Positions 7,931 through 58,290 of a DNA stretch of 64,000 bases are shown here, piece by piece. The stretch is from positions 25,544,001 through 25,608,000 of the forward strand of contig NC_086106.1 of assembly GCF_963921235.1 (NCBI RefSeq), written 5' to 3'. The position numbers were made by a program, and so were the translations under genes. The stretch is from Mobula hypostoma (taxonomy: Eukaryota). Below the pieces are notes generated by a model. That model was not told where the DNA came from, made no database searches, and saw only the letters and a program-made list of their open reading frames with translations. Each line of letters begins with the position of its first letter. The stretch's first letter is position 1.

Positions 7931-8811
7931 TTTTTGCATTCTTCTGCTGCTTCACTTCGTACTACCTCGATAAAGTGTGCAGCGATTCCATATGTATAAT
8001 CCGAATTAATGCAATCATGCTGCAATAATAAACAAACTCCGTTTCCAATTTACATATGTAGCAAAATGCTCCAAGTGGTGATAACACCCGATCCGTTTAA
8101 TCTACTCGTGAAACCAGATTATAGAAGCTGTCACTCTGTTATGATCCGATTCCATTTCTCCCTCTCTCCCTCTCTGCTCTGCTGCAAGAATAGTATGCGG
8201 TCACGTATGTGTACTTTAATCATAAAGTTACTTTGAGCACTGAAACTCTTTCTCACCTCTCACCAATGCACGGACGAACATTGTATCTGCATTCTCTATT
8301 ACGCTAAACAGTCGCCGGGTTGGTCGTATTATCTAAATATTCAGTATAAATCATAAGTAGCTGTTGCACCAAGCTCAACATAAGTAGCAAGCCGCTTGCA
8401 ATTCTTTCTCACTCCGAAGACCGCCCATTTTCCCGCGCTGTGTTTTCCTTTTGTTAGACATTGTCCAATTTAAATATGCCACGCTTGTCGGCAATGCTCA
8501 TTATTGCTCGTTGCAGACACTCGGAGAAATTGGGCAAGGACAATGTCAGGCAAGGTTAGCAATCGTAGTATGCTGTTGCAGCAAAAGAGGGTAGGTGAGA
8601 GCACATTGTGGTATCCCGGAAATGTATTGTAAAGTTCCAGTTTAGCTGCGCATTGTAATCAGGAAATGCTCCTTTAGGTTCGGCAGCTTGAACTGCTGAT
8701 TGACGCACTTTTAAGGAGGACACGTCACCACGACGACTTTCTCGGTGCGCCCCTTCCTGTTTCACGGAAAAAAAGACGCCCTCCAGTGAGAGCTTTTTGC
8801 ATTTTACAGGA

Positions 8812-9317
8812 CCAGTTTTACACAGATGCCAGAATTCAACATAAGAGCTTGAGGGCTATACAATTGACCCGTCCAGCTGTCTTTATGCAAACTAGTGATA
8901 AATCTCACTGGGCAATCTGGATGCTGCTCCATTACTGCTGTACTATAATTTGCTTCAGCAAATAATTTGGAGTTTCTCTACAATGTTGAGTGTACCAAAA
9001 CCTATCTGCATTAGCGTAAGTGTAATCACATTTGAGTGCTATGGTCTATCCTCTCTCAGCCGTTCAGTCGGGAGAATCCAGCCTCACTGAATCTTTCCCA
9101 CTCGTTCCTGCAATAAATGACAAAATGCATCAACATAGCTGGCTTGTATTGAACGCCTGGGAAATTCGATGGCCACCTTCGCCGGCTCCCCAGGCAACAC
9201 AGCCAATGCAATCAGTCTAAAACAGAGATTAGATTAGATTAGATTCAACTTTATTGTCATTGTGCCGAGTACAGATACAAAGCCAGTGAAATGCATTTAT
9301 TATGAGAAGCAAAGCAT
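8812..9317 (-). pseudogene. TCR V pseudogene, group A1; RSS-deleted, LINE-tail insertion in leader
   Basis: Same FR3-to-nonamer deletion as 5610. Donor is mutated to GGGAGC. The leader (ATG 9317) is split by an approximately 75-bp (GATTA)n-tailed insert at about 9228-9300. Confidence 0.85.
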
Positions 9318-10794
9318 GGTATCAAATTTATGGCTAGATAGAACGGCAGATTTATTCCAGGACGTAATTAACACTCACCAGAAATTGTGGTGTGGGATCG
9401 TTTCAGCACTACCTTCACTGCCTGGAAGAACCAAAACCTTTCCGAGCACCGAACAGAATCAGCTTCGTTGCTGTGTTTTCCACTGCCCGAAAAATGCTCT
9501 GGGTAGCACGTGCTCGTGATCGGAGGATCAGTGAATGTACACGTGAAGAGGAATTTGCGAAATTGGACAGATAAATCAGTTGACAATAAGACCATAAGAT
9601 ATAGGAACCAAAGGAGTCTGTTTGGCTTATCGAGTCAGCTCCGCCATTTCAGATGAAAAGGCGTCGTGATGGAATTATTCGATACACTAAACATATAATG
9701 AAAACGAGATTTTCAAAAAGTCAAATATACCTTTGGAAACAGATGCTATCTGTTTGTGTTCCTTCGACAGTAACCGGACGTTTTCACTGTTTGTCTCTTC
9801 CGTCGGTGGGAAAACACAAATTTTCAAAGCAAGTTCCCATGAAACAACAATAGACTATTCCCACTTGCAAGAGTATTAAACTGTAGGATGAAATTGAATC
9901 ATAATCTTGGTTTGACCATGCTCTTTATTTCCTGTCTGCGCTGCATTTTTATACGACTGTTGCGCTTTATTTTTGTATCTTTTTATTCTTTCACATTGTA
10001 CTACCTCGATAAGCTGTGTAGTGAATAAACAGAATCAATGCAATAATGCGACAATAATTAAGAAATTCAGTTTTCAATTTATATGAGTAGCAAAATGCTA
10101 CACGCGGTGATAACATCGGATCCATTAAATCTGATTGGGAAAGCAGATTAAACAAGCAATCACTCTGTTGTGATCCCATTCCCTTTCTCTACCCTCGCTC
10201 TCTTTTATACTGAAAATGCCTTCAAATATATGAATCTCGGAGCAGTATGCGGTCACTTATATGTACTTTAATCATAAACTTAATTCAAACGTTGATCCTT
10301 TTTCTCACAGCTTGGGAATGCAACGACCAAAATAGTATCTGCATTCTGCAACACGCTAAGCATCCGTAGGTTCGGCCGAATTATCAAAATACACAGTATA
10401 GATCATAAGTACCTGCTGCAACATCCTTAATTTCAGTAGAATGCCATTTGCAATTATTTGTCAATTCGAAAACGACCAATTTTCACACCCTCGGTTTTTC
10501 TTTAGTCAGCCATTGCCCCATTTAAATATATCCCGGTTCCACTCCGTCCTTATTATTTCACACTGCAGATACTTGAACAAAGTGGCCAAAGACGATGTCA
10601 AACAAGGCTGTCAATCACTATATGCTGTTGCAGCAAAAGAAGGTTTGTGATTGCACATTCCGGTATCCCAAAAAGTTATAAAGCTCAGTTTGTGTCCGCG
10701 TTGTTATCAGAAAATGCGCCTTTAGCTTCGGCGCCTTCTGCTGCTGAATGCAGTGGTCTGCAGTAGGGCACGTGACTGTGACTGATTTCCGGGC

Positions 10795-10836
10795 GCGCCC
10801 TCTGCAGATTCCTCGGAAAAAGGCGCCCTCCAATGA
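10795..10836 (-). promoter_or_regulatory. Two CTCF-like motifs 3' of the RSS
   Basis: Gene-sense TCATTGGAGGGCGCC (10822-10836) and TCTGCAGAGGGCGC (10795-10808), resembling CCACNAGRGGGCGC. Motif similarity only. Confidence 0.55.
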
Positions 10837-10865
10837 GAGTTTTTTGCAATACTGCATACGGAACC

Positions 10866-10904
10866 AGTTTTTGCACGGACCCGCCATCCCCATATAACAG
10901 TGTG
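10866..10904 (-). promoter_or_regulatory. 23-RSS
   Basis: CACACTG + TTATATGGGGATGGCGGGTCCGT (23 bp) + GCAAAAACT. Confidence 0.92.
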
Positions 10905-11327
10905 GTACTCGTTGCACAGAGATACATGGCAGAGTTCGACACGAGAGCTTCACGGATATTCAGTTGAGACGTCTTGCTGCCTTTCTCTAAAGTAGCGGTA
11001 ATCCTCTCTGAATACCGCTGCGTTCCTCCTGTGCTATATAACTTCAGCATATAATTTGGAGGTCCTCCAGTATGTTGAAAGTACCAAAAGATATTTGCAG
11101 TAACGTCGGTGTAACTACAGTTCAGTGTTATTTTCTGTCCTTCTTCAGTCACTGCATCGGGAGGATCCTGCGTCACTGAATCGTTCCCACTCGTTCCTGC
11201 AAGAAAGGACAAAATATATCAACAACGCTGGCTTGTATAGAATGCCGGACAAACTCGCTAGCCAGCTTCGCTGAGACTCACCAGGCAGCAGAGCCAATGC
11301 AATCAGCAATGAACAGAGGGAAATCAT
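10905..11327 (-). CDS. TRAV: Intact TCR V segment (TRAV/TRDV-like), group A2; leader 11282-11327, V exon 10905-11196
   Basis: MISLCSLLIALALLPG|TSGNDSVTQDPP...LNCSY...IFWYFQ...SNSAMYLCATS. GT-AG 85-nt phase-1 intron, open frame, C23/W41/C104, 23-RSS. Alpha versus delta cannot be settled from this window. Confidence 0.9.
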
Positions 11328-11463
11328 GCTGTCTAATTTCTGGCTAATTCGAACGGCAGATTCTTTCCAGGGCGTTATTATCACAACAGATTTTGTGGTA
11401 GAAGATATTTTCAGCGATATATTTCACCTTGTGTAAAACCGGAGGTGTTTCTCTGGTTAAAAG

Positions 11464-11503
11464 ATTGGCTGACAGAAAGTACCGAGCGTTCCAGAGCACC
11501 AAT
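11464..11503 (-). promoter_or_regulatory. Paired opposed CCAAT boxes, putative V promoter
   Basis: ATTGG at 11464-11468 and CCAAT at 11499-11503 (GCACCAATCAG). The same pair recurs upstream of the other intact V genes. Confidence 0.55.
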
Positions 11504-11551
11504 CAGAAGCTGTTTTGTAACCATGCGTCATTCTGCATGTTCATCCCCCAA

Positions 11552-11591
<40 letters not shown>

Positions 11592-12146
11592 TTAAACACA
11601 ACATAATCACATGCCTATAATTTTATTCCATTCTGTCCAGATATCGTCCTCTCGCATGAGTCATTTCCACCCTTCGGTCAAAGCGCTAGTCGTTCACTTT
11701 GTTTATGCCCCTCATCATATCATACACAGCTATTAGGTTACCCTTTACCTTCCGTCGTTCCAAAAACAAAGGTCCTTGCTCCCTGAAACTGAAATGTCCC
11801 GTGGAATATAAATGCACTTTCGGATGTGTAACTGAGTTTGAACATTGCGATTCGTTCTCCTTTAATTGTCAATGAAGAGCGATAAAACTTTCCCAGACAA
11901 TTCTGCAAAAGAAGGACAATATGACTGAACACTCAGTGCCCCCGTTGCACATGCGAGACACCAGCTGACTACTTGTGCAATGGTACGCCGGGCAATATAA
12001 CCCAAGTTATCGGTAAGGACCTGGAAGCACATAGAGTATACTTTCAGGCGAAATCTAAGCCAGATTACATTCAAGAAGCAAAGACGGCAAACTGGAGAAA
12101 ATTATGTCAGGTACGCTACACACTTCACATCGTGAAAAACCTCCCT

Positions 12147-13267
12147 TGTTACAAGAGGGCGTTTAAGGAGCCGACCTAAATGCAAGACACAGACACCGAT
12201 GTACGAGGAACTGGACTAACACTATTAAGAATGGAAGGGAATTCGGGAAGATGGGATTGATCAGAGGGTAATCTATGAAAGAGCAAAGCGTAAACGGGAA
12301 TACGCGTAGATGGACACGGACACAGGCCCTGGACTAGACTAGGATTCAGGGCCTGGGATAGGACTTGAACTAGGAGCACAGGACCCGGGCGTGGAGCTTG
12401 GAACAAGGAGCCTGGACTAGGAACTCAGAACTCCGGAACCAGAGTCTGAACAGGTCTCGGAACCTGGGTCTTGACTTGGTCCCGAACCCGGGCCTAGGCT
12501 AGGACTCGGGACTAGGACTTCCGCCAGGACTCGGGAGGAGGACTTGGATCGGACTTGAAATTCGGCTGGGACTTGGATCGGAATTGACACTCGACAAGGA
12601 CCTGGAACTCGAGGCCTTGACTTGAACTGGACTGTAACACGAAACACATAGCCGGGACCCCTCCTTGGATACAGGATATGGGGCTGGGACTCCTCTTAGA
12701 CACGGAACACAGAGCCAGAACCCCTCCTTGAGTAAAAGACATAGGGCCGGGACTCTTCTTATACACAGAACACTGAACAGAAAGAGATAGATCCCGACTC
12801 AAAGTATCGGCAAACAGCTGGACCTAGCTAGCGAAGGCGAGAACACGAAGATACAAGACCACACAACAATAGACTGTTCCTTATATTGACGAGAGAAGGC
12901 TTCAGTCTCACTCCGGCGGGTTAACTTGACGGGGATTCGGACTAAGTCACAGATGCAGTTGCAGACGAGGTCACAGACGAGGTCACTGACGAAGGTTGCT
13001 GACAAAGTTTCAGAGCAGGCTTCAGTCGAGGTTACAATACAAGTTTACAGACGAGGTATAGACGAGATAACTCACGGGGTTCTGAATGGAACAGTCCAGG
13101 TACTATCACTGGACCCCAGAGCTATTTCTGTTGCCAGCCCGAGACGAGAATCAGGTGCCTCAGTTAAGGCCGCGGATGGAACAAGGGAAAAACGAAAGAA
13201 CTGGAGTACCGAGTCCACGAACCGGACCGTGAACCAGAACGCGCATTTCACGGAATGGACCGTGACA
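12147..13267 (-). mobile_element. Solo LTR (probably Gypsy-type)
   Basis: Termini TGTTACA...CCGTGACA (TG...CA), a TATA-like AATATAAG on the minus strand near 12880-12887, and internal short repeats. Absent at the paralogous empty sites near 18478 and 57325. Confidence 0.75.
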
Positions 13268-13871
13268 CCTGTAAATTGCGCTGCTACATGTGTGCGGAAC
13301 CGGGGAAGTCAGTACTGAACCTATTTAGCCAGCGATCTGATTGGAAGTATGACATTGTCGGTTTCGTAATAATTTACTCTAATTCTAATGTATTTGTCGA
13401 TCTCATCCTCCGTTGTACTTTAAATGATACTTCATTTCTTGCTATGGATCTCCGTCCTTTGCGACTGCCTTAAAATTTCGTCACCGTGGCACGCTGTGCC
13501 TNNNNNNNNNNNNNNNNNNNNNNNNNNNNNNNNNNNNNNNNNNNNNNNNNNNNNNNNNNNNNNNNNNNNNNNNNNNNNNNNNNNNNNNNNNNNNNNNNNN
13601 NNNNNNNNNNNNNNNNNNNNNNNNNNNNNNNNNNNNNNNNNNNNNNNNNNNNNNNTCTGTGGGTACATCAGTTTACCAGCTGCCAGTTCACTGGATATTC
13701 CGGTATTCATTAACAATCTGAAAATCTTAGCCGACGCTGTCTAGTCACATGCACCCTCAGTATCTCCAGGTTGCACTCATCTTCACTGTAAATCGCACAA
13801 GCTCGTCAAAAATTATGTCCAGCCAAATGTTAACCACACAATATTGTTAAAGGCAACAGACATACAACATA

Positions 13872-14264
13872 AGAACTCCAGGTATATATATAAATGAGCT
13901 GACTCCGCCTCTGTGTATATCAGCTGAAAATCTCGCCAAGCATTCTGGAGTTTGCTCCAGTGTTCCTGAGTCATCTACCTTCAGCATTTATTTTTCCAGA
14001 TATTCCGCGATGTTGAGTGTATCAAAAATATTTGCATTATTTCTTGTGTAATTGCAGTTTAGTGTTATGAGCTGACTTTCGTGAGTCGTTAATTTGTTAG
14101 CATGCTAGATCACTGAACCATTCTATCTCGTTCCTGCATTAAAGGACAAAATGCACTAATATCCCACACTTGCACTGAACTCACGTTGCACTCTCTGGTC
14201 ATATGCGCAGCGTCCTGTCTGTCAGGATGACGAATGTAATGAATACGAAACAAAGGGAACACAT
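13872..14264 (-). pseudogene. TCR V pseudogene, group B, 3'-truncated
   Basis: 46-nt leader (MCSLCFVFITFVILT) followed by ACAGG instead of GT, 85-nt intron. The exon starts at 14133 and is deleted after FR3, with no RSS. Confidence 0.85.
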
Positions 14265-15422
14265 GCTTCTGACTTCCGCCTCGATAGGACGGTAGATATC
14301 TTCCAAGAAATTATCACTATGGCAGATGTTAGGGAGTAAAATCGTATCAAAAGTAGATTTCACAGTGCCCTGCTCAACGATTAGTAGATAAAATGCAGCC
14401 GAGGCTCTATGAACAGCAAAAACAAAATCGGATTATTTTGATTTACCCTCTCTGCCTTTTTCCCTCACACTCTCTGTCTTTCTCCCCATATCTCTCTTTA
14501 CCCTCCTATCTCTCCATCTATCTATTTATCTGTCTTTCTCTCTTTCTCGCTCTGTCTCCCTGTCTCACTTTCTCACTCTCTTGCTCTCTCCCCACCTTCT
14601 TCTCTCTTTCGCTATCCTTTTGAACATTAATTTCTATTTATCTACGTCCTTTGTTCGCTCCATGAATTCATTCTCGCTTCCTTTGCCTCTGCACTCTCCC
14701 TTCTCACAGCATGTGACCACGCTAAGCAGCGTATTACTGAGTCATCCACCATGTTATGACTTTCTACTGCTCCTGCTATCTATCCTATCAATAGCCTTTT
14801 AAGTTATTGACGAAGTACCTTTCAGCATCATATCTATCAGCATCCCGCTAGATATTTCTTGTCAATGGTACACCAAATATTTACGCCCTAATATTTTTCC
14901 GTAAGTGAGCCAATCTCCTATCCATGGCAATAGACTCAATTGAGAATTTATTTTCTGCAGTTGTCTTCGGCCTCACATCTTAATGGCTCCTTTCTCAGAA
15001 TGTATAGAAAGAGACCCTGTAAGTCCTGGTCACCGTGTACCATGAAGGAAATCTTGTGAAGAGTTCAAAGTCGTGACCGTGTGTTGTAGATAACAAGGGG
15101 AAATGGATATTGCGATGTCTCGAACATATTTTAACTTCTTATTTGTACCAACAAACTGAATTTAGGCCCAGACGCCTGCGATCCTGAGAGCTGACAGATT
15201 AAGGCGAACGAGTGACCCTCCTTGCCGATTATTCCCCTTTAACGGTGCGTGCTGCATGGCAGAAAGATACAATGAAGAGTCCGACGCAAGAGCCTCGGTG
15301 ATGCATCATTGAACCATCTTCGATCATTTCGCAAAGCAGTGTTAAACAGCAAAACATCAATTAACGACAGGTTGGGTTGCGGAAAAGAGACAGCGATGAT
15401 GCTATGAATACAGTCTTCTCAG

Positions 15423-20780: not shown

Positions 20781-21555
20781 AATATGATCAGTCGTATCAG
20801 ATATTACCATTACTACAGTTTTCTTTCTGCTTAGGGTTAGTCCAAGTCTTTCGCTCTCTGTGTTGATGGTAGTTCATTCATGCTAACTATGTTCTGTTTG
20901 TCAATCTCACCCTTCCCTTCTTCGTTTTACTTTAATTCACAGTTCATTTCTTGCAATGAATTCCTTCATTGTTCCCTATTTTGTTACTGTCCTATATCTC
21001 CGACGCTATGTCACTCAATGCTTCTCTGTCTGCCTCTGTATTCCAATCTGCAATTTTAGAAAATCATCAATATAGCTTTAAACCAGTTGAGGGAACATCC
21101 TTTAATCCAACGCCAGTACACTCCGTATTAATTTTCAAACCGTAAACTAAACATCTACTTATCTGCACTTTTAGGAAGCTAATGTCAATAGACCCCACCT
21201 GAAATTTATCTTCATCAGAAGCATTTAGTGTGACAGAATGTCCAATGCTGTTCCGTCATATGCAACCTCCGTATCTTTAGGTTTCACTCATCTTCACTGT
21301 TAATCCCTCACGGCAATGAAAAATAAAGTCCAGCAAAAAATTAAACACAAGATATTTTTACAGGCAACAAAGAGACATGGACACCACCATATAGTAGAAA
21401 TGCTTCGGAAAGCCAATATTCCTAGGTAAATCTAAATTCAAGAAGTTTTCTGCAAGTTTGCTGCTTGGGCGCATTTTGCTGCTGAATGCGCATTTCAAAT
21501 CGACCACGTGATACCCATGCTTTCTGCGTGCAGCTGTTCCAGTTCTCCAGCAAAA

Positions 21556-21570
21556 GGCGCCCTCTAGTGA
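21556..21570 (-). promoter_or_regulatory. CTCF-like motif 3' of a dead RSS
   Basis: Gene-sense TCACTAGAGGGCGCC, 12 bp beyond the nonamer. Confidence 0.6.
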
Positions 21571-24263: not shown

Positions 24264-24278
24264 GGCTCCCTCTAGCGA
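24264..24278 (-). promoter_or_regulatory. CTCF-like motif 3' of the RSS
   Basis: Gene-sense TCGCTAGAGGGAGCC, 23 bp beyond the nonamer. An identical copy lies at 30357-30371. Confidence 0.55.
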
Positions 24279-29745: not shown

Positions 29746-30394
29746 ATATATGACTGTGTTGCCAAGTTTGTAGATGGAAGGATAAGTCGTTCTTAGGAAA
29801 CATGCAGGCGACAGAAGGACAGAAAGATGAGGGAATGGGCAAGAGAGTGGCAGACGAAGTAGAATGCACCAAAACGCATGTCATGCATATTGGTATAAAA
29901 AATCAATGTGCAGACTATTTTGTAAGTGGGTAAAAAAAATCCAAAAATCTGGAATGCAAAGAGACTTGGAGGATCCAAGTGCAGAACACCCTGACGGTTA
30001 ACTTGCAGATAGAGTCGGTGGTGAGGATGGAAAATACAATGTTAGCATTCATTTCAAGATGTCCAGAATACATGGGCAGAGACGTAATGCAGAGGATTTG
30101 TAATACACGTGAGACCTCACATTGAGCATTCCGAACGGTTTTGGGTCCCTATTCTAAGAAAGATGTACTGGCGTTGCAAATGGTTCAGAGGACATTCACA
30201 TGGATGACACAGTCAGACCCGCAAGCAAAGCAGCTGTCCAACTAACTGAAAACTGTAGTCAGTAAGTTTTCCCCTTTCCCCTGGAGTTTCGCTTTTTAAG
30301 TGAATCACGTGACAGTGGTGGATATGTGTTTACGCTCCGGCTATTTTCCGGCAAAAGGCTCCCTCTAGCGAGCGCTCACTGCATCGCGGAGGTC

Positions 30395-35539: not shown

Positions 35540-36681
35540 ACTATCTCCTCCCTCTTTTGCACGGATTCCCTGTGGATGCTCCTAATTACAAACAATTCTC
35601 CACGGATAGGTATATTCCTCCTCGTACAAAACTGCTACTAGGGGTTTGGGTGTGTTGTAGCTCGTGTCCCCCTGCCCCTTCACCCTCTTGTAGCCTCTGA
35701 GCAGGGAGGTTGTGTTGTCTCAGGACGGACCGTTGTTCGATGTTGAGCAGAGTGCGGTGAGCCGCAGGCGCGCTCCGTTCCGTGCGCCCATTGTACGCAG
35801 GATCTGTTCTGTCCAGATCGGCAATGGCACTGTATTAGGGAGGGCTGATCACGCAAATATACATAACGGAAGCTGGCACAAAACAACTGGAGATATTTGA
35901 ATCCAAGCAGTGGCCATTTCATGTCCAAACAACCTGAAATCTTCACCGATGTAGTTTGCTATTGAGTTTCGCTGTCCTAATTAACCGCGTGATTCTCGCA
36001 AATATTTAGGTGCGCCACTTCGACTTTTCTGGCACGACCCGCCCTCTAGCGACGGTTCACTGCATCACACCTCGCACAGACAATATGTACTTTAAACATA
36101 AATTCACTTTGAACAATGACCATTTCTCACAGTACGAGAATGCAACGGCCAAAATACGATATACATTCTCTATCACACTAAACATCCGGAGGATCTGTCG
36201 CATTATCTGAATCCTCAGGATAAATCAGAAGTAGCTGCTGCAACGTCCTTAATTTCATCAGCATGACACTTGTTGTTCTTTGTGAAACTGAAAACAACGA
36301 GTTTGTCCACACTCTGTTTTCCCTTAATTACCCACTGCCCTTTTTAAATATATCGCAGTTCCACTCCGTCCTTATTACTTCTCCATGCAGATGCTCGAAC
36401 AAAGTGGTCGAAGACGACGTAATACTACGTTGTCAAACGTGATGCCGTTGCAACAAAGAGAATGGGTAAATGCACATTGCCGTATCCAGGAAATACATTA
36501 CAAAGAACAAGTTTCGATTTGTGTTGTAGTCATGAACTGTTCCATTATATTCGCCGCCTTGGGTTGGTGATTGCAGCGTTCTTACGCAGGGCAAGTGACC
36601 ACGGCTGATTTCAGTGTGCGTCCTACCACTTTCCCGGCAAAAGTCGCCCTCGAGTGAGAGCTTTTTGCATTATACAGAACC

Positions 36682-38165: not shown

Positions 38166-39835
38166 GACTATGAATACTAGGTTGTGTATTTTGTAACTTC
38201 TCTGATTTTTAACGGAACCATTGAAACAAGCTGGGCATTCTTTTCGCTGTACCCTGAAACAACTGACAACAACAAATATATAACAAAACATAAATCATTT
38301 TGATTTAACTGTGGCGTCTGCAAAGTGAAGGAATATATCAGGCTGTCCTTCATCAGTTCATATAACATGGGTTGAGAAGGAAAGTGGCGGTGCTGCTGGA
38401 CTGCAGAGTGCCTATCATGACACCCTGGCGATATCTGGTATCATGTCCCAGAGATTAGGTTCGATTCCGACTTTCAATGCTGTCAGCAGATATTTATGCG
38501 CTCCGTTTCCAGAATTCCCGAGTTGCTATGTTTTCCACGCTCTGGGTAGCACGTGCTCGTGATCGGAGGATCACTGAATGCACATGTTAAGAGGAATTTG
38601 CCAAATTGGACAGATAAATCAGTCGACAATAACACCATAAGATACAGGAACTGAATTAGGCCATTTGACCTGTCGAGTCAGCTCACCCATTTCAGATGAG
38701 AAGGTGTGGTAATGGAATTATTCGATACACTAAACATATAATTAAAATGAGATATTCAAAACGTCGAAATATACCTTTGGAAAAAGATGTTATCTGTTTG
38801 TGCTCCTTCGACAGTAACCGGACGTTTTCACTGTTTGTCCCTTCCATCGGGGGGAAAACAGAAAATTCTAAAAGGAAGTTCCCATGAAACAACAATCGAC
38901 TATTCCCACTTGCAAGAGTATTGCACAGTGGCATGAAATTGAGTCTTAATCTTGGTATGACCTTGCCCTTTATTTCCTGCCTGTGCTGCATTTTTATATG
39001 TCTATCATAGTTTATTTTTGTATCCTTTTATTGTTTTACTTTGTACCTCCTCGCTAAGCTGTATAGTGAATACATCAGTATAAACAGAATCTATGCAATA
39101 GGCGACAAAAATAAACAAATTCCGTTTTCAATTTAGATATGTAGCAAAATGCTACACGTGCTGATATCATCGGATCCGTTAAATCCGATTTGGAAACCAG
39201 ATTACTCAAGCAATCACTCTGTTGTGATCCCATTCCCTCTCTCTTCCCTCTCTCTCTTTTATACTGATAATACCTTCAAAATATGAATCTCGGTCAAACA
39301 TATGTACTTAAATCATACATTTAATTCAAACATTGAACATTTTTTTCACAGCTTCGGAATGCAACGACCAAAATAGTATTTGGATTCTCCAACACGCTAA
39401 ATATCCGCAGGTTCTGCCTGATTATCTAAATACCCAGTATAAATCATAAGTAGCTGTTTCATCATCCTTAATTTCAGTAGCATGCCACTTGCAATTATTT
39501 GTCAATTCGAAAACGACCACTTTTCACACCACCTGTTTTCCTTTAGTCAGCCATTGTGACATTTAAATATATCCCAGTTCCACTCCGTCCTCATTATTTC
39601 ACACTGCAGGTACTTGAACAAAGTGGCCAAAGACGATGTCAAACAAGGCTGTCAATCGTGATCAGCCGTTGCAGCAAAAGATGGTGGGTGATTGCACATT
39701 GCGGTATCCCAGAAAGTTATAAAGCTCAGTTTCTTTCCGCGTTGTAGTCAGGAACTGCTCCTTCAGCTTCGGCGCCTTCTGCTGCTGAATGCAGTGGTCT
39801 GAAGTAGGGCACGTGACTGTGACTGATTTCCGGGC

Positions 39836-39877
39836 GCGCCCTCTGCAGATTCCTCGGAAAAAGGCGCCCTCCTGTGA
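39836..39877 (-). promoter_or_regulatory. Two CTCF-like motifs 3' of the RSS
   Basis: Gene-sense TCACAGGAGGGCGCC (39863-39877) and TCTGCAGAGGGCGC (39836-39849). Confidence 0.55.
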
Positions 39878-43609: not shown

Positions 43610-43624
43610 GGCGCCCTCTAGTGA
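43610..43624 (-). promoter_or_regulatory. CTCF-like motif next to a destroyed RSS
   Basis: Gene-sense TCACTAGAGGGCGCC, identical to 21556-21570. Confidence 0.6.
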
Positions 43625-46239: not shown

Positions 46240-46273
<34 letters not shown>

Positions 46274-47397
46274 TTCTATCTAGCCCCCCCCCCCGCCTTT
46301 TGTACGCCTTCCATGTGGATGCTCCTAATAGGCAAACATTCATCCTCGCATACATATATTCCTCCTTGTATGAAACTGTTACTAGGGGTTGTGGGTGTGT
46401 TGTAGCTCATGTGATCCTGACCCTTCACCCTCTTGTAGCCTCTGAGCAGGGAGGTTGTGTTGTCTCAGGACGGGGCGTTGTTCGACGTTGAGCAGGGTGG
46501 GGTGAGCCGCGGGCGCCCTCCGTTCGATGTGCCCATTGTACGTAGGATCGGCAATCGTACTGCATTAGGGAGGACTGATCATGCAAATATACATAGCGGA
46601 ACCCTGCACAAAACCACTGGGGATATTTGAAACCAAGCAGTGGTTTCATGTCCAAACAACCTGAAACCTTCACCGATGTAGTTTGCTATTGAGTTTCGCT
46701 GTCCTAATTAACCACGTGATTCTCGCAAATATTTGGGTACGCCACTTCGACTTTTCTATCACGACCCGCCCTCTAGCGACGGTTCACTGCATCACACCTC
46801 GCACATACAGTATGTACTTTAAACATAAATTCACTTTGAACAACGACCGTTTCTCACAGTCCGGAAATGCAACGACCAAAATACTGTTTGCATTCTCTAT
46901 CACGCTAAACATCCCCAGGATCTGTCGCATTATCTAAATACGCAGTCTAAATCATAATGAGCTACTGCAACATCCTTAATTTTAGCAGCATGGCACTTTC
47001 TATTCTTTGTCAAACTGAAAACAGCGAGTTTGCCCACGCTTTGTTTTCCTTCAGTGAACAACTGTCCTACTTAAATATAATGCAGTTCCACTCCTTCCTT
47101 ATTGCTTCTCCATGCAGAAGCTCGAACAATGTGGCCAAAGACGACGTCATACTACGTTGCCAATCGCAATATGTGGTTGCAGCAAAGAGGGTGGGTTAAT
47201 GCACATTGCCGTATCCCGGAAATACATTATAAAGATCAATTTTCGGTTTGCGTTGTAGTCATGAACTGTTCCGTTACCTTCGGCGCCTTGTGTTGGTGAT
47301 TGCAGGGCAAGTGACCACGGCTGATTTCAGTGTGACCGCTACCACTTTCCCGGCAAAAGACGCCCTCCAGTGAGAGCTTTGTACATTATACAGAACC

Positions 47398-47910
47398 AAT
47401 TTTTGTTCGAGACCCGCCGTCTTCATGCAACAGATGGCACTCATTGCACAGAGATAGATGCCAAAGTCCGACACAAGAGCTTTAATGATATTCCATTGAG
47501 CGGTCTTGCTGTCTTTGTACAGAGGTATATTCCAGAGTCCGGGACAAGAATTCCAGAGATACTGAAAATGGTTGACTCTCCGTTTGTGCATAACAGCTGT
47601 AAACCTCGCCGGGGCATTCTGAGTCCACGCCAGTTTTCCTCATCATATATCTTCAGCAGTTGTTAGGAGATTCACCGCGATGATTGTCTTAGTTCGTGTG
47701 TAACTGCATTTCAGTGCTATCATCTGACTTTCGTCAGCCGATAATTCAGGAGCATCCTGATCACAGAATTGTACTTTCTCGTTCCTGCAATAAACGATAG
47801 AATGCAGTGATTTCCCTGACTTGCACTGAACTGCGCTCTCGCTGGTCACGTGTGCAGCGTCTTAGCTGTCAGGATGACGAATGAAACCTATAAGAAACTG
47901 AGGGGCACAT
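47398..47910 (-). pseudogene. Chimeric V pseudogene: group B V fused to the FR3 and RSS of a group A1 V
   Basis: ...DSGIYLC (about 47517-47540) is followed by KDSKTAQWNIIKALVSDFGIYLCAMS in another frame and a degenerate RSS (CATCTG...ACAAAAATT). Confidence 0.85.
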
Positions 47911-48169: not shown

Positions 48170-48700
48170 CCCCGCCCCCGACCCGTCTCACGGTCTGTAG
48201 AACATCTTATCAGCCCTACATGTTGCTCAAAAGTGCCACAATAAAAGTGACAGTGTACTCGAACTGAATGTCATTCGAATAAACCAGCCTTTTATTCCCG
48301 AGTTTCTGATAGCGGGAAAAACATCTTTCCTTGCTACATATCGACGTCAATAATATTTACTACTACAATCGCCATTAGAGTGATATCCTATCCAATATTT
48401 GCCCGGAATATGAAGACATTGTGCACGCAGAGATTCCTTCATCGTTGTGGAAATCTACCAAATATATTTGCGACGAAGATGTCAATGTGCACTCGAGCTT
48501 TACGAAAATCCGACGTGAGCGTGTGATCTCACATGGATTCAACGTAAGTTCTTTAGCTTGTACGATTTGTCTTGGCGACTAGCTCCCTGATGAAATGGAC
48601 CTCGAGATCTTCATTGATTCATGTGCATCTTTTATAACGTTTCAGAAAAGCGCGCCCTCTGCCCATGGCCTGTTCTTACGGGTCTTGCATCTCCCTGCGA

Positions 48701-50843: not shown

Positions 50844-53079
50844 TTCTTACTGGCTTCCTTTATATTTTTTTTTATTCGCCGCCCTTCCGTAACTTCATTT
50901 GACTTCCTGTTTCTTTCATATAGCGTCCTCGTCTTTGCAACAGCTTTCGTTATCGCCATGCTATTCCAATCTCTCTCTCTCTCCCCCCCCCCTCTCTCTC
51001 TCTCTCTCTCCCTCCCTCTATCACTCTCAAATTCTTAGGAACTAGATGGTTGCTCAGGTGGAAAGGTGACATTCGCCATGAGCGGAATAATTACCCTGTG
51101 TGAATTACTGATACTAATAAATTTCAATATTTCGTTGCACATCGTTGCACTGTAGCAGAGAATGGAACATAATATAGATCTCGATATATGCTATTATGTG
51201 GGTATTTCTTTTAGGTAATGCACTTCTAATCGACTGCATTTTGCACAAGCGAGTTTGAGTCCGACACTTGCTGACTGAGGTAATTTCAAATAGGATTAGA
51301 CGGTACGGTGTGATTTTATTACGACCCAAATGAATGAACGTTTGAATCAGAAAATCAATCAATTTCTGACAAGTTCAAATAACAACGTATTACTGAAACA
51401 ATTACTGGACATAACTAGAAATACTCAGTCTGCCTGGAAAGGCCTATGAAAATAAAGTTTCAGACCCTTCATGAGACTGTGAACTAAGTTGGGCAGTGTC
51501 ATCAATGGGATTGTTCCATGCATAACTCAAGATTAAAACGATAGTGGTAAAATATCAAGTTAGAAATTTGCAAACAGATCATTTCATTCTACTCCCCTTA
51601 CTTCGACAGTAAACGGAACATTCTGTCTGTTCTCTTTTCCAGTCGTGCAGGTAATACATTGTGTACAGGGATAGTTTCTGCTCTGCGTTTTTCAGAGTAA
51701 TGGGCCGCAGGATGAGATAGTCTGTTAACCCCCAATGCACTGGTTGTGGTCTTACTCTTTGCTGCAATGCATTATTTTGTTACTTTGGCTGTTACTTTCT
51801 TCTGCGTTCCAAAAGTGTTTATCTTATATTATCTCATCAAACAGTGCAATGAATTGTTCTATAAGATCGGAACCAATTCAACATTTCACAGTGTGTTGGC
51901 ACATTTCACTCTTTTATAAACGCAACTCTAACATCGGTATTTAACAAAATATTGGAAGGATGCCTTTGCCATTGACATATCTATTCTGGATACATTAAAC
52001 ATTCTTGTTTTGTCCTATCTTGTCACTCCTATTCCTTCTTCACAGAAAACTATCACAATTGTATCCTCTCTATGTATCATACTATAGATCCATAGGTGGT
52101 TTAACTTATGTAAATTATCAATAAAATGAAAAGTATTTGTCACAACATCTTATCTTTCAGTGGCATACCATTTGTTAAGCATCGTCAATCCGAGAACCAT
52201 CGATTTCCCACCACTCTCTGGTTTTCTTTATTGAATCAAAGTCAATAGATTCCACATGCGCATTCGCCTTGATCTGTATAATTTAATGTTGCACCGCATT
52301 CAATGTTTTCTATTTCCAAGTTCGAAGATAACGTCACTGTTTTTTCCTCATGAATCACTAACAATATGACAAAAAACAACGTTGAATATAGTTGGCAACC
52401 GTGATATGGTATCCCATGCAAAAGAAGGTATTTAGATATTGTAGATATCCAAGAAATACAATGTAATGCTTTCATTTGAGTTGAATGCAAGAATAGTACT
52501 CAAGCTTGACAGCTTTTGCGACCCAGCGACGCCCTTTTAGGTCGACCACGTTAATTTACTAATATCTGTGTCGGCTCCTTGCAGTTAAATGGCAAAACAG
52601 GCCCTCCACTGACATTTATTGAATCACCCATAGCTGTTTTATCTTTGTTTTTGTCCGTACCCGAGGTTTCCCTGCAAGACCGTGCTTCCTCATAACACAG
52701 AGGAACATGGTGCAGTTGCAACAAAGAGCTCCAACATATTCTTGGCATTAACTCTAACCGGACATTATGGAGAGCGCTCGAAATTTTCCTGAAAGTATTT
52801 TACAGATTCCCTGTAATGCTGACTGTACTAAAAGTAGTTACGCCAGCGCTAGTGTTGTGTTTTCTCTTTCTCAAACATTAATTGAAGGGAACCTTACATC
52901 CCTGATTTTTTTCACTCACTGAAAGGTAGAATATTGGAAGATGCCTGGCTTGCACTAATCTTACTAGAAATCAGTTGGACGCCACTCCCCGACATTTGCT
53001 AGGCAAAAGGCCAGTGCAAACTATAAGGAACAAAGGAATGGCGCATGGCGTCGGGCTTCTGACTCTGTCGAAAGGAAGT

Positions 53080-53338: not shown

Positions 53339-55681
53339 AGTGTTGGCACAGACGATAGATCAGAAGCAAAATTGTAGGGTGAGATTGGATCAGCGACATC
53401 GGTCTCCGTGGGTAAGACTTGGGGCGTTGTTCTGCTAAAGTATCAGATGATAATGCGGAATTGGATTTATTTAGGCAGAATTCGTCATTCACTTTCGTTC
53501 TTTTCCTCTCTGCTATTTTCTCCGTTCCATCAGTCATCGAAGTCATCAGAGAATCTGATAACTATCGCTGCCCTAGAGACTCCCTACACCCTATATGCCT
53601 GTCTTTCCACAAGTGTTTATTTTTGTCGTTCCCTCTCTACCGTTGGTGATCTTCCTCTCATTCCCTGCCCCGTCGCAGTCGCTGTAGCATTGAAATATTG
53701 AGGCTCCAAGACAAATGGGTGACGTGGTCGAGTGTTCAAGATGGACTAAATTTCCATTGTCTCTACATACGGGGGTTCCAATCCCACCCTGGTCTATCGA
53801 AGTCATTTCTGCTTCTGTTAATCAGTGTCGGTGCATTGACTTTTTTTTAACGGAAAGAATGGACGTTTAAATCCGAAATGACCCTAACGGCGACTCCTTT
53901 GCTTGCAACTTCAGAAACAGCTCTATTTCCATCTTGAATATCTCTATTTTTCCCTTCCAGGGTTGTTTTGAAGAGCCTGACCCGGCGTTACATGCTGACT
54001 TTAGATCTTTGCGGAAATGGGGCCCGCTCCCAGGGTTCCACGACTGGCCGTCATTCGATATCAAGGATGCGGCCTAAGAAATTAGTGGCTCAGGAGACTG
54101 GCGAACCGAAGGTCGGTGGCTCTGCAGGAATCCGGTATGTTCAGTGCACGGAAGAACGAAAGCAGCGAGCTGGCTGCCGGTTGTGTGCCCCTAGACCCTC
54201 TATATTTGGGCACAGAGCTCGGAAAACGGACTTTTGACATCGCAAATCGCTGATGTTTGTTATGTCTCCCCTCTGAATGTGAAACAGAGAGACCTCTTTC
54301 TCCCTTATACGGGAGACAGAGACCTGTAATATGTCGAATACCGGGTGAACAAATAGTCTTTCCGGTACTGCAAGTCTGGGTCTCTGCTGATGCTTTGCTG
54401 CACGCTTAAGTTACGGTGGTGGGTGCCGATGCTTTTTTTTTGCTGGTGGGGGAGAAGGGATTGTTGATTTGCTGCTGATACGCGTTGGACAGAGGAGCTG
54501 TGGGTGGTCTCTGGAGTTCTAACATTTAAATGTCGTTCATTCTTTGGCGGCACTCCTCTGTTTTTCCTGGATGGTTGCGAAGAAAACGTATTTCAGGATG
54601 TATAAGGTATATATTTCTCTGACATTAATTGTACCTCTGAAGCTTTTGAAATCTCAGCAGTGTTGACAAAGGGATAATTAGGGCCGCATGGCTTGAATTA
54701 CTCAGCTGGTCTGAAAAGGTCTGAGGGGAGTGAACGTTCAGGTTTTTCGTCAGCTCGTTCTCCTGTAAATGTTAAAGGGCACTAGCGCGCAAAAAAGAGA
54801 AGTCTCATATATCTTATATTCATCAGTATGGCCATTGCTGATCCAGCGTGAGAGGGTTAACGTGATTATGGACTCCTTAGATCAATTTATCGTAAAATGC
54901 AACTCGTTGAAGTCAACGTGGAAGAGCACAGCCTTTCCAAATTAGCTTGAAGTATTCTATATCTGTTTTGAACAGAAGAGAGCAGCTACGTTACGATCCA
55001 AACAGAGATGTTCCAATGCAAATAAAGCAACAGTCAGCGCCGTGGACGTAAGTTCCATCATCAGGAGACAACCTGTGGAAAGTACCTGGACTGGGTGGTG
55101 TCTAAGGCACTGCGGTTGGTTGCTGCACAACTCAGTTCGCGGGGCTACATGCTGAACATTTTCACCTCGTCCCACTTCCATATGAAGTTACCACCTGGCT
55201 TAGAATATCACTATTAAGTTTGCACTACAGAACAAATATAAAGTAACTTGCCTAATTGACCACCGGCCAGTGACTCTGAATCTCTGAATCCATCACCATT
55301 ACGTGATAATGGCACAGATTAACTCCAGCTATCCAGCCAAACTCGACCCACTGCTGGTCACTACTGCCAAAGCTCTACTTCCTAGTCTTACATGCATCTA
55401 CAGGTGTACTATAAGCGAACCCACATTCGCTAGACAGCTGTTATCGACTGCGCTATGTAAAGTCCCAGTTTGGGTGCGCGTTGTAATCAGGAACAGTTCC
55501 TTTAGCTGCCGCGCCCTGTGCTGCTGATTGCAGCGCTCTGAAGTAAGGCAGGAAACCATGGCTGATTTCCGGTTGCGCCCCTCCCACTTTCTGGGCAAAA
55601 AGGACGCCCTCCACTGAGAGCATTTTGGATTATTCAGGACCAGTTGTTCGATCGGCCCTGCCATCTGCATTCAACTTTATG

Positions 55682-56115
55682 ACACTCATTGCAGAAAGAT
55701 GCATACAGGAGTCCGAAACATGAGCTTAAACGATCTGCAATTGAGCTGTCTTGCTGCCTTCCTGCAGAGTAGTGGTGAATCTCTCTGGGCAATGTGGACG
55801 CCGCTCCATTCTTCCTGTGCTATATACCGTCAGCAAATAATTTGGAGGTTCTCCACAATGCTGAATCCACAAAAACATATCTGCATCATCGTTGGTATAA
55901 CTACAGTTCAGTGACATGGTCTGTCCTTTATCAGCCGTTACGTCGGGAGGATCCTGTGTCACTGAGTCATTGAACTACTCGTTCCTGCAATAAAGGACAG
56001 AATACATCAACGTCGCTGTCTTGTATTGAACACTGAGGAAATTCGCTGACCAGCTTCGCAGAAACTCACCAGGCAGCACAGCCAATTCAAACGCTAATGA
56101 ACAGAGGGACATCAT
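55682..56115 (-). pseudogene. TCR V pseudogene, group A2
   Basis: Intact leader and 85-nt intron, but a +2 frameshift at the exon start, TAA in FR3, C104 changed to S, and heptamer CATAAAG. Confidence 0.9.
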
Positions 56116-57959
56116 GCTGTATAATCTCTTGCTGGATTAACCGGCAGACTCTTTCCAGGTCGTAAATATCACTTAGCAGTTACTGTTGTGTGGGATCGTT
56201 GAAACGGTACCGTTTACTATGTGTAACACCGGGGACGTTTCCCTGGTTAAAGAATTCGCTAACACTAAGAACCGAGCCTTTCTGAGCGCCAGTCAGAATC
56301 CGTTTTGTTTCCATTCGTCATTCAGGGTTTTTCTCCGCTCAGTCAAGGTCCCGCGTCCACTCCCCGCCCTATCCCGTCTCTCTGTTTCGCTTTCTCTCTG
56401 TCTCACGCCCTCTCTCTCTCAGTGTGCCCAACTGCCTCTGTCCCCTGTTCTCTGCATAATCACAGCATATTCACAAACTTATCGATGTGTAATCCAGATC
56501 AAATATGAAGTTCACGTGGTCACTCCGTCGTCTTCGTCAATGTTATGCTGGAAGTATTTACTTATTCATTTGTTTATTTAGTTAGTTATTTGGAGATATA
56601 TCCCACAATTGTCCCTTAGATCAACATTTATTTGTCTTCCGTCAATATTCAATGTCAACAAGTGTTAATCTGGTTGTTCCCTAATCTTTGTTTGCTGTTA
56701 GGGAACCAATCTCCTATCCACGCCAATAGACTCCTGACAGCACCCTTTATGCAACCACCACACCTTTAGTTAAAAAAAACAACTCACATCTGGCAGTCCC
56801 CTTGTAATTTCTTCCCATCGCCTTAAAATACCGTCCTCTCTCATGACCCGTTTCCACCCTTAGGCAAAATCGCTGGCTGTGTACTGTATCTTGCCTCATG
56901 TCATATTATACATAGCTATTAACTAACCCCTCATCTTCCGTCTTTCCAAAAAAAGGTACTTGTTCGCAGAAACTAAGATGTCCCGGGAAATATACATGCG
57001 CTTGCGGATGTGCAACTGAACTTCAGCATTACGATTCATCCTCCTTTAATCATCAACGCAGAGAGCTTAATCCTCCCCAAACGATTGTACAAAAGAAGGA
57101 CAAAATGACTGAACATCCATTGCTCCTGCTGCACCTGCAACACACCCACTGCATATTCGCCCAAAGATTCACCGGGCAACATAGCCCATATATTCAGTAG
57201 CAATCAAGGAAGCACATGGCGTCTGCTTTCAAGCGCGATCTAAATCCAGATTACATACAAGAAGCTAAGACCACATTTTGAAAGAATGTTATCAGATACG
57301 CTGCACCTTTCATTTCGCGTAAAACCTGCGAATATTGCTCTGCTAAGTGGGAATTGAACCGGGGAAGGCACAGCTGAACCTGTTTAGCCACCGATCTGAC
57401 TGGAACTACTACACTCTGTTTAGTTCTATATTTCTGTTCTACTTGTCGATCTCAACCCACATCTCTTCGTTCCTTCTTTCTCCTATATTTCCGTCCCTGT
57501 TTCACTCAATCGCCCTCTGTCTGCTTATATATTCCAATCTTCATTTTTTTCTAAATCATCAATGCAGATATTAACTAGTTGTGGGAACATCGTTTAATCC
57601 AATTCCAGTCCACTTGGGATTCATTTTCAATCCGAAAGATAAACATCCATTTATCTCCACTTTGAGGAAGCTAATGTTAATAGACTCCATCTGAAATTTA
57701 TCTTCGTCTAAGCATTCAGTGTTACAGCTAATAGAATGCTGTCTGGTCATATACGCCCTCAGTATCCCCAGGTTGCAGTCATCTTCACTGCTAATCCCTC
57801 AAGGTGGAGAAAAATTATGCCTAGCAAAAAAAAAATAATAGCTGCAAATATTGTTATAGGCAAGAAGGATAGACATGGTCACCAAGATGTAGTGGAAATG
57901 TTCCAGAAAACTACCATGAAATCCCTAGGCAAAGCAAAATTTAAGAAGTGTTCCATAAA

Positions 57960-58178
57960 CGTGTTCCACGGGCAGCAGTGGAGGCCAAGTCATTGGGTGT
58001 ATTTAAGGCAGAGATTGATAGGTATCTGAGTAGCCAGGGCATCAAAGGTTATGGTGAGAAGGCGGGGCAGTGGGACTAAATAGGATAAAGTGGATCAGCT
58101 CATGATAAAATGGCGGAGCAGACTCGATGCGCCGTATGGCCTACTTCTGCTCCTTTGTCTTATGGTCTTATGGTCTTA
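57960..58178 (+). mobile_element. Short 5'-truncated CR1
   Basis: 3' UTR with a (TTATGGTC)n tail. Absent from the paralogous flanks at 21440 and 43510. Confidence 0.8.
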
Positions 58179-58275
58179 CAAAGTTGGGCGCATTTTGCTG
58201 CTGAAAGCCGCGTTTTAAGTTGACCACGTGATCCTCATGCTCTGCGCGTGCAGCTGTTCCAGTTTCCCAGCAAAT

Positions 58276-58290
58276 GTCGCCCTCTAGTGA
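58276..58290 (-). promoter_or_regulatory. CTCF-like motif 3' of a dead RSS
   Basis: Gene-sense TCACTAGAGGGCGAC. Confidence 0.55.

What the first reader, a model, noticed from the sequence alone, without database searches (positions are those of the whole stretch)
8775..58290. Same-orientation CTCF-like motif immediately 3' of nearly every V RSS
Seen: the gene-sense motif TCRSTRGAGGGMGYC (approximate consensus) lies 12-30 bp beyond the nonamer where one is recognisable. It occurs at 8775, 10822, 21556, 24264, 30357, 36643, 39863, 43610, 47359, 55603 and 58276, with a weaker copy at 48652 and second copies at 10795 and 39836. It is shared by V groups A, B and C although their other flanks diverge. 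Ten of the 12 primary sites carry the CpG, and none shows a TG/CA transition there. Established: the CTCF consensus is CCACNAGRKGGCRC, and RSS-adjacent CTCF elements at mouse proximal VH segments promote RAG access during cohesin loop extrusion. Mouse Tcra V CTCF sites are instead mainly promoter-associated. Inference: an Igh-like RSS-CTCF scanning architecture may exist in a fish TCR V array, pointing toward the presumed J/C side. Caveat: every copy has T rather than C at the first core position.
Basis: partly seen in the sequence, partly recalled or inferred. Interest (0 to 1): 0.85.

Follow-up and report, generated by a model that had tools for sequence, protein, structure and literature searches.

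The report
CTCF-like site beside ray TCR V genes
A short DNA motif resembling the binding site of the genome-folding protein CTCF sits just after the recombination signal of most T-cell-receptor V segments in this ray. Mice have a similar arrangement at antibody heavy-chain genes, but only some copies here are good CTCF matches and binding is untested.

Summary
All V segments in the window lie on the minus strand. The 15-mer occurs in V sense at every listed coordinate: 10 hits at ≤1 mismatch against 0.08 expected. I found three more copies, at 36038, 46765 and 52598.

The motif usually starts 23-25 bp after the 23-RSS nonamer. It is the best-conserved 15-column stretch of the whole V 3' flank between V groups (0.81 identity; next 100 bp 0.45). 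It recurs at the same spot in a skate contig and in one unidentified public read-assembly contig, where the flanks have otherwise diverged.

The CTCF reading is only partly supported. Group B copies score 17-20 bits and two RSS-less copies (36038, 46765) score 10.6; those five fit the published consensus at ≤2 mismatches. Group C scores 8.5-10.5. The six group A copies score 3-6 bits, though intact group A genes carry stronger co-oriented sites 30-95 bp further on.

CpG retention is not exceptional. The strongest sites flank pseudogenes. Five bamboo-shark V segments lack the site. The J/C side lies outside the window.

The scan noted this before on other DNA of the same genome (s1-141836, s1-141898, s1-142021). 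I found no paper describing it.

The parts
21556..21570 (-). Primary motif, group B, beside pseudogene V ending about 21644
   Evidence: 0 mismatches. 17.4 bits on the CTCF matrix. 1 mismatch to CCASYAGRKGGCRS. Gap of 12 bp from the nonamer.
43610..43624 (-). Primary motif, group B, beside pseudogene V ending about 43741
   Evidence: Best site in the window at 20.1 bits, p about 3e-7 against Markov nulls.
58276..58290 (-). Primary motif, group B, beside V ending 58347
   Evidence: 17.2 bits. The heptamer is CTCAGTG, which lacks CAC.
24264..24278 (-). Primary motif, group C, beside intact V 24343-24624 (heptamer 24334-24340, nonamer 24302-24310)
   Evidence: 10.5 bits, gap of 23 bp. The V is V-set by Pfam, E = 4e-11. 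RSS coordinates checked.
30357..30371 (-). Primary motif, group C, beside V ending 30436 (one stop codon)
   Evidence: 8.5 bits. It is a 91%-identical duplicate of the 24264 unit.
10822..10836 (-). Primary motif, group A, beside intact V 10907-11188 (heptamer 10898-10904, nonamer 10866-10874)
Evidence: Gap of 29 bp.
10794..10808 (-). Second co-oriented CTCF-like site of the V 10907 flank
   Evidence: 10.3 bits. 2 mismatches to the published consensus.
10729..10747 (-). Third co-oriented CTCF-like site of the V 10907 flank, about 95 bp after the primary motif
Evidence: 14.4 bits.
39863..39877 (-). Primary motif, group A, beside intact V 39943-40233 (heptamer 39934-39940, nonamer 39902-39910)
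   Evidence: 5.5 bits, gap of 24 bp. Pfam V-set, E = 2e-12.
39835..39849 (-). Second co-oriented site of the V 39943 flank
   Evidence: 10.3 bits.
39770..39788 (-). Third co-oriented site of the V 39943 flank
   Evidence: 14.4 bits.
8775..8789 (-). Primary motif, group A, beside a pseudogene whose Cys codon and heptamer are deleted
   Evidence: 0 mismatches. 5.0 bits. The deletion is visible in the alignment.
36643..36657 (-). Primary motif, group A, pseudogene V ending 36723
   Evidence: 2 mismatches. 4.7 bits.
47359..47373 (-). Primary motif, group A, pseudogene V ending 47439
   Evidence: 0 mismatches. 5.0 bits.
55603..55617 (-). Primary motif, group A, pseudogene V ending 55684. A secondary site lies at 55511-55524.
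   Evidence: 6.3 bits. The secondary site has 2 mismatches to the consensus.
36038..36052 (-). Copy beside a V remnant that has no RSS
   Evidence: 10.6 bits. The core differs from the chicken beta-globin FII core quoted in PMC6746451 at 3 of 14 positions.
46765..46779 (-). Duplicate of the RSS-less copy at 36038
   Evidence: 10.6 bits. It lies in the block 45555-47516, which is about 83% identical to 34770-36800.
52598..52612 (-). Unlisted copy beside a V ending about 52690 (heptamer CACGGTC, 23-bp spacer, good nonamer)
   Evidence: 2 mismatches. The CpG is replaced by CC. Gap of 33 bp.
48651..48665 (-). Weak copy that keeps only the 3' half of the motif
   Evidence: 3 mismatches. Context shown.
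21505..21510 (.). E-box CACGTG 46 bp after the motif. The same element lies at 10769, 30306, 39810, 46713 and 58225.
   Evidence: 6 of the window's 19 CACGTG sites sit 46-48 bp after a motif, spread over all four ray lineages. The remaining copies carry one-base variants there.

Best explanation
This is an RSS-adjacent CTCF-type binding element that belongs to one old family of TCR alpha/delta V segments in batoid fishes.

Proposed mechanism (inferred, not shown):
- CTCF binds the core in V sense, with its N-terminal, cohesin-blocking face pointing away from the RSS.
- Cohesin loops extruded from a RAG-loaded recombination centre would stall there.
- That stall would hold the neighbouring 23-RSS at the centre and raise that V segment's chance of joining, as shown for D-proximal mouse VH segments.

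In this window the element is in mixed condition:
- Near-consensus in group B.
- Chicken FII-like in the two RSS-less copies (36038, 46765) and, more loosely, in group C.
- Drifted in group A. There, two further co-oriented sites 30-95 bp downstream may take over the role.

What is shown is motif, position, orientation, deep conservation and a CTCF-like constraint profile. CTCF occupancy, loop anchoring and any effect on V usage are inferred.
For: - Chance. 10 hits at ≤1 mismatch against 0.08 expected, all on the V strand. Six minus-strand matrix hits reach 14 bits against about 0.4 expected per strand, with none on the plus strand. Five of those six lie within 130 bp of a V 3' end.
- Conservation within the ray. 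The motif is the top 15-column window of a 490-column alignment of 11 flanks: 0.81 identity between groups, against 0.49 for V end plus RSS and 0.45 for the next 100 bp.
- Conservation across lineages. It is again the top window (0.78) across six lineages that include the skate and the unidentified contig. In two of those lineages the downstream flank no longer aligns.
- Constraint profile. It correlates with CTCF matrix information content only in register (r = 0.72; frequency overlap 0.53 against at most 0.37).
- Skate contig L001. Its only three forward hits of at least 12 bits are the sites 24-31 bp after the three V nonamers, at 16.8-17.3 bits.
- Contig L007. An 18.1-bit site lies 25 bp after the nonamer.
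- Older paralogue pairs keep 14-15 of 15 motif bases while their flanks are 56-75% identical.
- Literature. VH RSS-associated sites lie 17-19 bp after the nonamer in one orientation, and are more conserved than the intervening spacer (PMC6746451). Such sites promote V usage during RAG scanning (bioRxiv 10.1101/2020.01.01.891473). The CTCF core motif is the same from lamprey to human (PMC5504073).
Against: - Only 5 of 14 primary copies fit the published consensus at ≤2 mismatches.
- Group A copies carry G where CTCF sites almost always have A, plus T at the first core C, and score 3-6 bits.
- The best copies flank pseudogenes with dead heptamers. In mouse VH families the pattern is the opposite.
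- In four recent duplicate pairs the motif is no better kept than the flank: 56 of 60 bases against 86% flank identity, P = 0.075.
- CpG retention is unremarkable.
- Five bamboo-shark V segments, one unidentified ENA contig and fourteen V segments from GCA_933207985.1 (probably an amphibian) lack the site.
- No binding data exist.
Confidence: 0.6

Rival explanations
1. The block binds a different factor or set of factors. One option is another zinc-finger protein that recognises the invariant GAGGGCG half, acting with a bHLH-Zip protein at the fixed E-box. The combination would form a small promoter or barrier element, for instance for germline or antisense transcription through the RSS, rather than a CTCF loop anchor.
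For: - The invariant bases are TCA and GAGGGCG. The position that CTCF constrains most strongly in the 5' half varies among A, G and C.
- Several other blocks are co-conserved in the ray: a T-rich GCCGGGAAA block, GCGCAC, and CACGTG at +46 to +48 in all four ray lineages.
- A TGCAGTGAGCG block abuts the core in ray, skate and L007. Its spacing does not fit the CTCF upstream motif, which lies 5-6 bp before the 19-bp core (PMC9004084).
Against: - Group B, the skate and L007 copies are near-perfect CTCF cores, and the constraint profile fits CTCF in register.
- The E-box and the other blocks are not kept in skate unit 3440 or in L007, whereas the core is.
- I could name no alternative factor with a matching motif.
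Confidence: 0.17
2. The motif is a passenger. It would be a piece of ancestral V flank copied along with V segments by tandem duplication and homogenised by gene conversion, now without function in this part of the locus.
For: - The array is built of duplicated blocks: 9496-15223 resembles 38539-45067, 23678-25891 resembles 29773-31989, and 34770-36800 resembles 45555-47516.
- Within those recent pairs the motif is not significantly better kept than the flank.
- Most V segments here are pseudogenes.
- Group A shows drift in the 5' half of the motif, even between copies whose flanks are 94% identical.
Against: - The motif is the best-conserved window between V groups whose proteins are only about 50% identical, and between ray, skate and L007, where flanks have diverged beyond alignment.
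- Position-specific constraint mirrors a known protein's specificity.
- Spacing from the nonamer is kept while the intervening sequence is not.
Confidence: 0.15
3. The element is an architectural boundary site rather than a per-V recombination enhancer. In this reading, arrays of co-oriented sites, including those beside dead V segments, shape sub-domains or slow extrusion across the V cluster, independently of the neighbouring RSS.
For: - The strongest sites flank pseudogenes with defective heptamers, and two copies have lost their RSS altogether.
- In mouse, proximal VH sites also act as barriers to further upstream scanning.
Against: The near-fixed distance to the nonamer in ray, skate and L007 argues that the tie to the RSS itself is selected, at least in functional members.
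Confidence: 0.08

Closest known systems
RSS-associated CTCF-binding elements of D-proximal mouse and human VH segments (Ciccone et al. 2019, PMC6746451; the VH81X site studied by the Alt laboratory)
   Same: - The core lies immediately 3' of the 23-RSS nonamer at a near-fixed distance.
- One orientation relative to V transcription.
- The motif is as well or better conserved than the RSS, and more conserved than the spacer between them.
- Restricted to particular V families.
- A CpG in the 3' half of the core in many copies.
   Different: - The locus is TCR alpha/delta-like, not IgH.
- The gap is 23-25 bp rather than 17-19.
- The first core base is T in every ray copy.
- Many copies fall below the usual CTCF thresholds.
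- Pseudogenes keep the site here, and keep the best versions.
- Binding and function are untested.
CTCF sites of the mouse Tcra/Tcrd V region (Loguercio et al. 2018, PMC5859386; Shih et al. 2012)
   Same: Same kind of locus. In mouse, sites in the V region are mostly co-oriented toward J-C (129 of 144).
   Different: Mouse sites lie mainly upstream of V promoters or between genes, not beside the RSS. I found no systematic promoter-side sites in this window.
Chicken beta-globin 5'HS4 insulator core (CTCF footprint II plus USF footprint IV)
   Same: The RSS-less copies and group C carry a core close to the FII sequence quoted in PMC6746451. The RSS-less copies differ at 3 of 14 positions, group C at more. 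A USF-type E-box lies about 47 bp away in many ray copies.
   Different: The pairing of CTCF with USF at HS4 is recalled from my own knowledge, not tested here. The E-box is missing from the skate and L007 copies. No barrier or enhancer-blocking assay exists for this element.

Membership tests
RSS-associated CTCF-binding element (VH type) | Core matches the CTCF consensus or matrix at usual thresholds | tested here: inconclusive
   Met by group B (17-20 bits, 1-2 mismatches), by the two RSS-less copies at 36038 and 46765 (2 mismatches), and by the skate and L007 copies (16.8-18.1 bits). Not met by the six group A copies (3-6 bits) or the two group C copies (3 mismatches)..
RSS-associated CTCF-binding element (VH type) | Short, near-fixed distance 3' of the V nonamer, with a non-conserved spacer | tested here: met
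   23-25 bp in groups A and C, skate unit 3440 and L007. 12-16 bp in group B. 29-33 bp in three copies. The intervening sequence differs between lineages.
RSS-associated CTCF-binding element (VH type) | Single orientation relative to V transcription | tested here: met
   14 of 14 window copies, 3 of 3 skate copies and the L007 copy are in V sense.
RSS-associated CTCF-binding element (VH type) | Motif more conserved than neighbouring flank | tested here: met
   It is the top window in both alignments. This does not hold for recent duplicates.
RSS-associated CTCF-binding element (VH type) | Functional V segments carry the site and pseudogenes typically do not | tested here: not met
   The three intact V genes have 3-10 bit primary sites, while pseudogenes of group B have the 17-20 bit sites.
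RSS-associated CTCF-binding element (VH type) | CTCF and cohesin occupancy in rearranging lymphocytes, and an effect on V usage | not testable with these tools
   No ChIP, gel-shift or repertoire data for this species are reachable.
RSS-associated CTCF-binding element (VH type) | Convergent partner sites on the D/J/C side | not testable with these tools
   The window holds only V segments. Scan notes gave no J/C position.
Two-part CTCF site (core plus upstream motif bound by zinc fingers 9-11) | Upstream motif 5-6 bp before the 19-bp core | tested here: not met
   A conserved TGCAGTGAGCG block exists in ray groups A and C, the RSS-less copies, skate and L007. It starts 12 bp before the first core base and so abuts the 19-mer. 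The published spacing is 5-6 bp (PMC9004084). The upstream-motif consensus itself is from my memory.
TCR alpha/delta V gene segment | V-set domain, 23-RSS, and relatives annotated or used as TCR alpha/delta V | tested here: met
   Pfam V-set, E = 1e-11 to 2e-12. Heptamer, 23-bp spacer and nonamer are present. Relatives are named TCR alpha or alpha/delta variable. Two relatives are cDNAs joined to a J-alpha-like GKLIFGGGT segment.

The most novel reading that the evidence does not exclude
Placing a CTCF site directly behind the V RSS would be an ancient device of rearranging antigen-receptor loci, not a mammalian IgH speciality. On this reading it was already in use in TCR loci of cartilaginous fishes. 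Cohesin-driven RAG scanning with V-side anchors would then date to early jawed vertebrates, and batoid V families would preserve it together with a fixed E-box partner.
Probability: 0.15. Interest if true: 0.85.

Novelty: new variant of a known kind. Interest (0 to 1): 0.6.

Why it matters
In mice, CTCF sites set immediately behind the RSS decide which proximal VH segments are used during cohesin-driven RAG scanning. Whether that device is a late mammalian IgH feature or an old part of V(D)J recombination is not known.

A conserved, co-oriented, RSS-tied CTCF-type core in a TCR V family of rays and skates makes that question testable in a lineage several hundred million years removed from mammals. 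Three full-text searches found no paper on RSS-adjacent CTCF sites in cartilaginous fishes.

The window also offers a natural series of strong, intermediate and drifted sites beside intact and dead V segments. That series suits binding and usage comparisons.

Tried and rejected
- **Word-index protein search.** A search with one ray V found nothing. A later search with the L007 V found only a cDNA without a contig.
- **Shark DNA.** Look-ups for the catshark Scyliorhinus torazame and for two other chromosome-scale assemblies whose V proteins are most like catshark V returned no DNA. My shark sampling is therefore five bamboo-shark V segments, all negative.
- **Unnamed NCBI, JGI and ENA hits** turned out to be cyprinid-like teleosts.
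- **Source species of L007.** The read run is not mentioned in the paper library. Its best DNA match is the skate contig, at 71%.
- **CpG retention as evidence of protection:** rejected.
- **Canonical CTCF upstream motif:** rejected on spacing.
- **Transposon or SINE origin of the flank.** The motif does not occur away from V flanks, so I did not pursue this.
- **Promoter-side CTCF sites:** none found systematically.
- **J/C position from scan notes:** nothing useful.

Full report
**What is in the window.** The 64-kb window is 44.5% G+C with four assembly gaps. tblastn with three intact V exons finds about 22 V-like segments plus one found later by eye (52690), all on the minus strand. Three have open V exons with Pfam V-set matches of E = 1e-11 to 2e-12: 10907-11188, 24343-24624 and 39943-40233. 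The rest carry stop codons, deletions or transposon insertions.

Relatives in public data are named TCR alpha or alpha/delta variable. Two are cDNAs joined to a J-alpha-like segment. Scan notes call the genome a devil ray. I did not verify the species.

**The observation.** There are ten hits at 0-1 mismatch against 0.08 expected. Site 36643 has two mismatches, and the weak and second copies have three.

I found further copies:
- 36038 and 46765, beside V remnants that have lost the RSS.
- 52598, beside an unlisted V with a good 23-RSS.
- Third CTCF-like sites at 10729 and 39770.

The gap from nonamer to motif is 23-25 bp in most copies, 12-16 bp in group B, and 29-33 bp in three copies.

V remnants without the motif have a transposon insertion or a deletion at that spot, are truncated V fragments, or belong to two other V groups. 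One of those groups keeps at most the 3' half of the motif.

No copy lies within about 750 bp of an assembly gap, so the gaps do not affect the count.

**Is it CTCF-like?** I used two yardsticks.

The first is the published consensus CCASYAGRKGGCRS (quoted in PMC6746451) at ≤2 mismatches. It gives 17 hits against 7.9 expected. Eleven are on the V strand, and ten of those lie in V 3' flanks. Only five primary copies pass: three of group B and the two RSS-less copies. Group A flanks pass only through secondary sites 30-95 bp further on.

The scores are:

| Copies | Score (bits) |
|---|---|
| Group B | 17.2-20.1 |
| RSS-less copies (36038, 46765) | 10.6 |
| Group C | 8.5-10.5 |
| Group A | 3.2-6.3 |

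Six minus-strand hits reach 14 bits against about 0.4 expected per strand. None on the plus strand does.

Group A fails because it has G where CTCF sites nearly always have A, in addition to the T at the first core C.

**Is it conserved beyond the flank?** In a MAFFT alignment of 11 flanks, identity between V groups is highest of all 15-column windows at the motif. The value is 0.81, against 0.75 for the best coding window, 0.49 for V end plus RSS, 0.45 for the next 100 bp and 0.34 beyond.

I then added two skate units and one unidentified contig. The motif remains the top window (0.78). In two of these lineages the downstream flank no longer aligns at all.

Per-position information across seven lineages correlates with the CTCF matrix profile only in the right register: r = 0.72, against at most 0.53 elsewhere.

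Older paralogues keep 14-15 of 15 motif bases against 56-75% flank identity. In four recent duplicate pairs, however, the motif (56 of 60) is not significantly better kept than the flank (86%, P = 0.075). Constraint is therefore clear on the deep scale and undetectable on the recent one.

The CpG argument fails. The window's CpG observed/expected ratio is 0.72. Four other flank CpG columns are kept in 8-9 of 11 copies. One new copy has lost the CpG.

**Other species.**

| Source | V segments with the site |
|---|---|
| GCA_028641065.1 contig (little skate by my recollection) | 3 of 3, at 16.8-17.3 bits, 24-31 bp after the nonamer; these are the only forward hits ≥12 bits in 13.5 kb |
| Logan contig L007, unknown species | 1 of 1, 18.1 bits, 25 bp after the nonamer |
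| Bamboo shark | 0 of 5 |
| Unidentified ENA contig | 0 of 1 |
| Callorhinchus, read-through translation of one V | no sign |
| GCA_933207985.1 (probably an amphibian) | 0 of 14 |
| Danionella | 1 of 14 |
| Paddlefish | 1 of 6 |

The site is thus V-family-specific, as it is in mouse VH. I can vouch for batoids only. I could not confirm the earlier scan note that sharks carry it.

**Companion blocks.** Within the ray, the flank also keeps a T-rich GCCGGGAAA block and GCGCAC. It also keeps an E-box CACGTG 46-48 bp after the motif in 6 of 13 copies, spread over all four lineages, with one-base variants in the others.

A TGCAGTGAGCG block abuts the core in ray groups A and C, the RSS-less copies, skate and L007. 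It starts 12 bp before the core. The CTCF upstream motif lies 5-6 bp before the 19-bp core (PMC9004084). I therefore do not accept it as a canonical two-part site.

**Mechanism.** The closest known system is the RSS-associated CTCF element of D-proximal mouse and human VH segments. Those sites lie 17-19 bp after the nonamer, have one orientation, and are better conserved than the spacer. They promote V use and impede further scanning during cohesin-driven RAG scanning.

Cohesin is held at the N-terminal side of CTCF, downstream of the core (PMC12885311). Here that side points away from the RSS. If J/C lies that way, an extruding loop would stall with the RSS at the recombination centre.

Mouse TCR alpha/delta uses promoter-side sites instead, so this would be an IgH-like solution in a TCR locus.

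All steps beyond motif, place, orientation and conservation are inference. Three facts keep rivals alive: the drift of group A, the strong sites beside dead V segments, and the co-conserved E-box. The rivals are a different or composite factor site, a passenger flank, and a purely architectural role.

**Verdict.** This is a new variant of a known kind. The scan already reported it from other windows of this genome (s1-141836, s1-141898, s1-142021). Three full-text searches found no paper on it.

Noticed in passing
window 10769-10774, 21505-21510, 30306-30311, 39810-39815, 46713-46718, 58225-58230: An E-box CACGTG, mostly T-flanked (USF/TFE type), sits 46-48 bp after the motif in all four ray V lineages. 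These six account for 6 of the window's 19 CACGTG sites.
   Followed up: partly
window 9496-15223 versus 38539-45067; 23678-25891 versus 29773-31989; 34770-36800 versus 45555-47516: The V array is built of tandem segmental duplications that are 83-91% identical. Several motif copies are therefore paralogous pairs rather than independent observations.
   Followed up: yes
window, V remnants ending about 1116, 13850, 21644, 43741, 58347: Group B is a family of V pseudogenes sharing the same defects: no Cys23, no Trp41, and a heptamer lacking CAC in two of three. They nevertheless carry the strongest CTCF-type sites. The family seems to have been duplicated after it died.
   Followed up: partly
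window 5560-5621 and 60570-60628: Two group A-like pseudogenes share a repeat insertion at the same point, between the nonamer region and where the motif should be. The insertion therefore predates their duplication.
   Followed up: no
window about 52620-52700: An unlisted V 3' end with heptamer CACGGTC, a 23-bp spacer and nonamer ACAAAAACA. tblastn did not detect it.
   Followed up: partly
window about 43700-43760: A TA dinucleotide microsatellite lies inside the 3' part of the group B V exon remnant.
   Followed up: no
L007 281-826; P0002; P0161: Public gene calls for V segments often read through the RSS into the flank. As a result, the CTCF-type core is translated into the tail of the predicted protein, for example in the L007 product.
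   Followed up: partly
L006 (paddlefish) 3058-28277: All six strong CTCF matrix hits on the V strand of this TCR V cluster are co-oriented with the V segments. One of them lies 45 bp after a nonamer.
   Followed up: no
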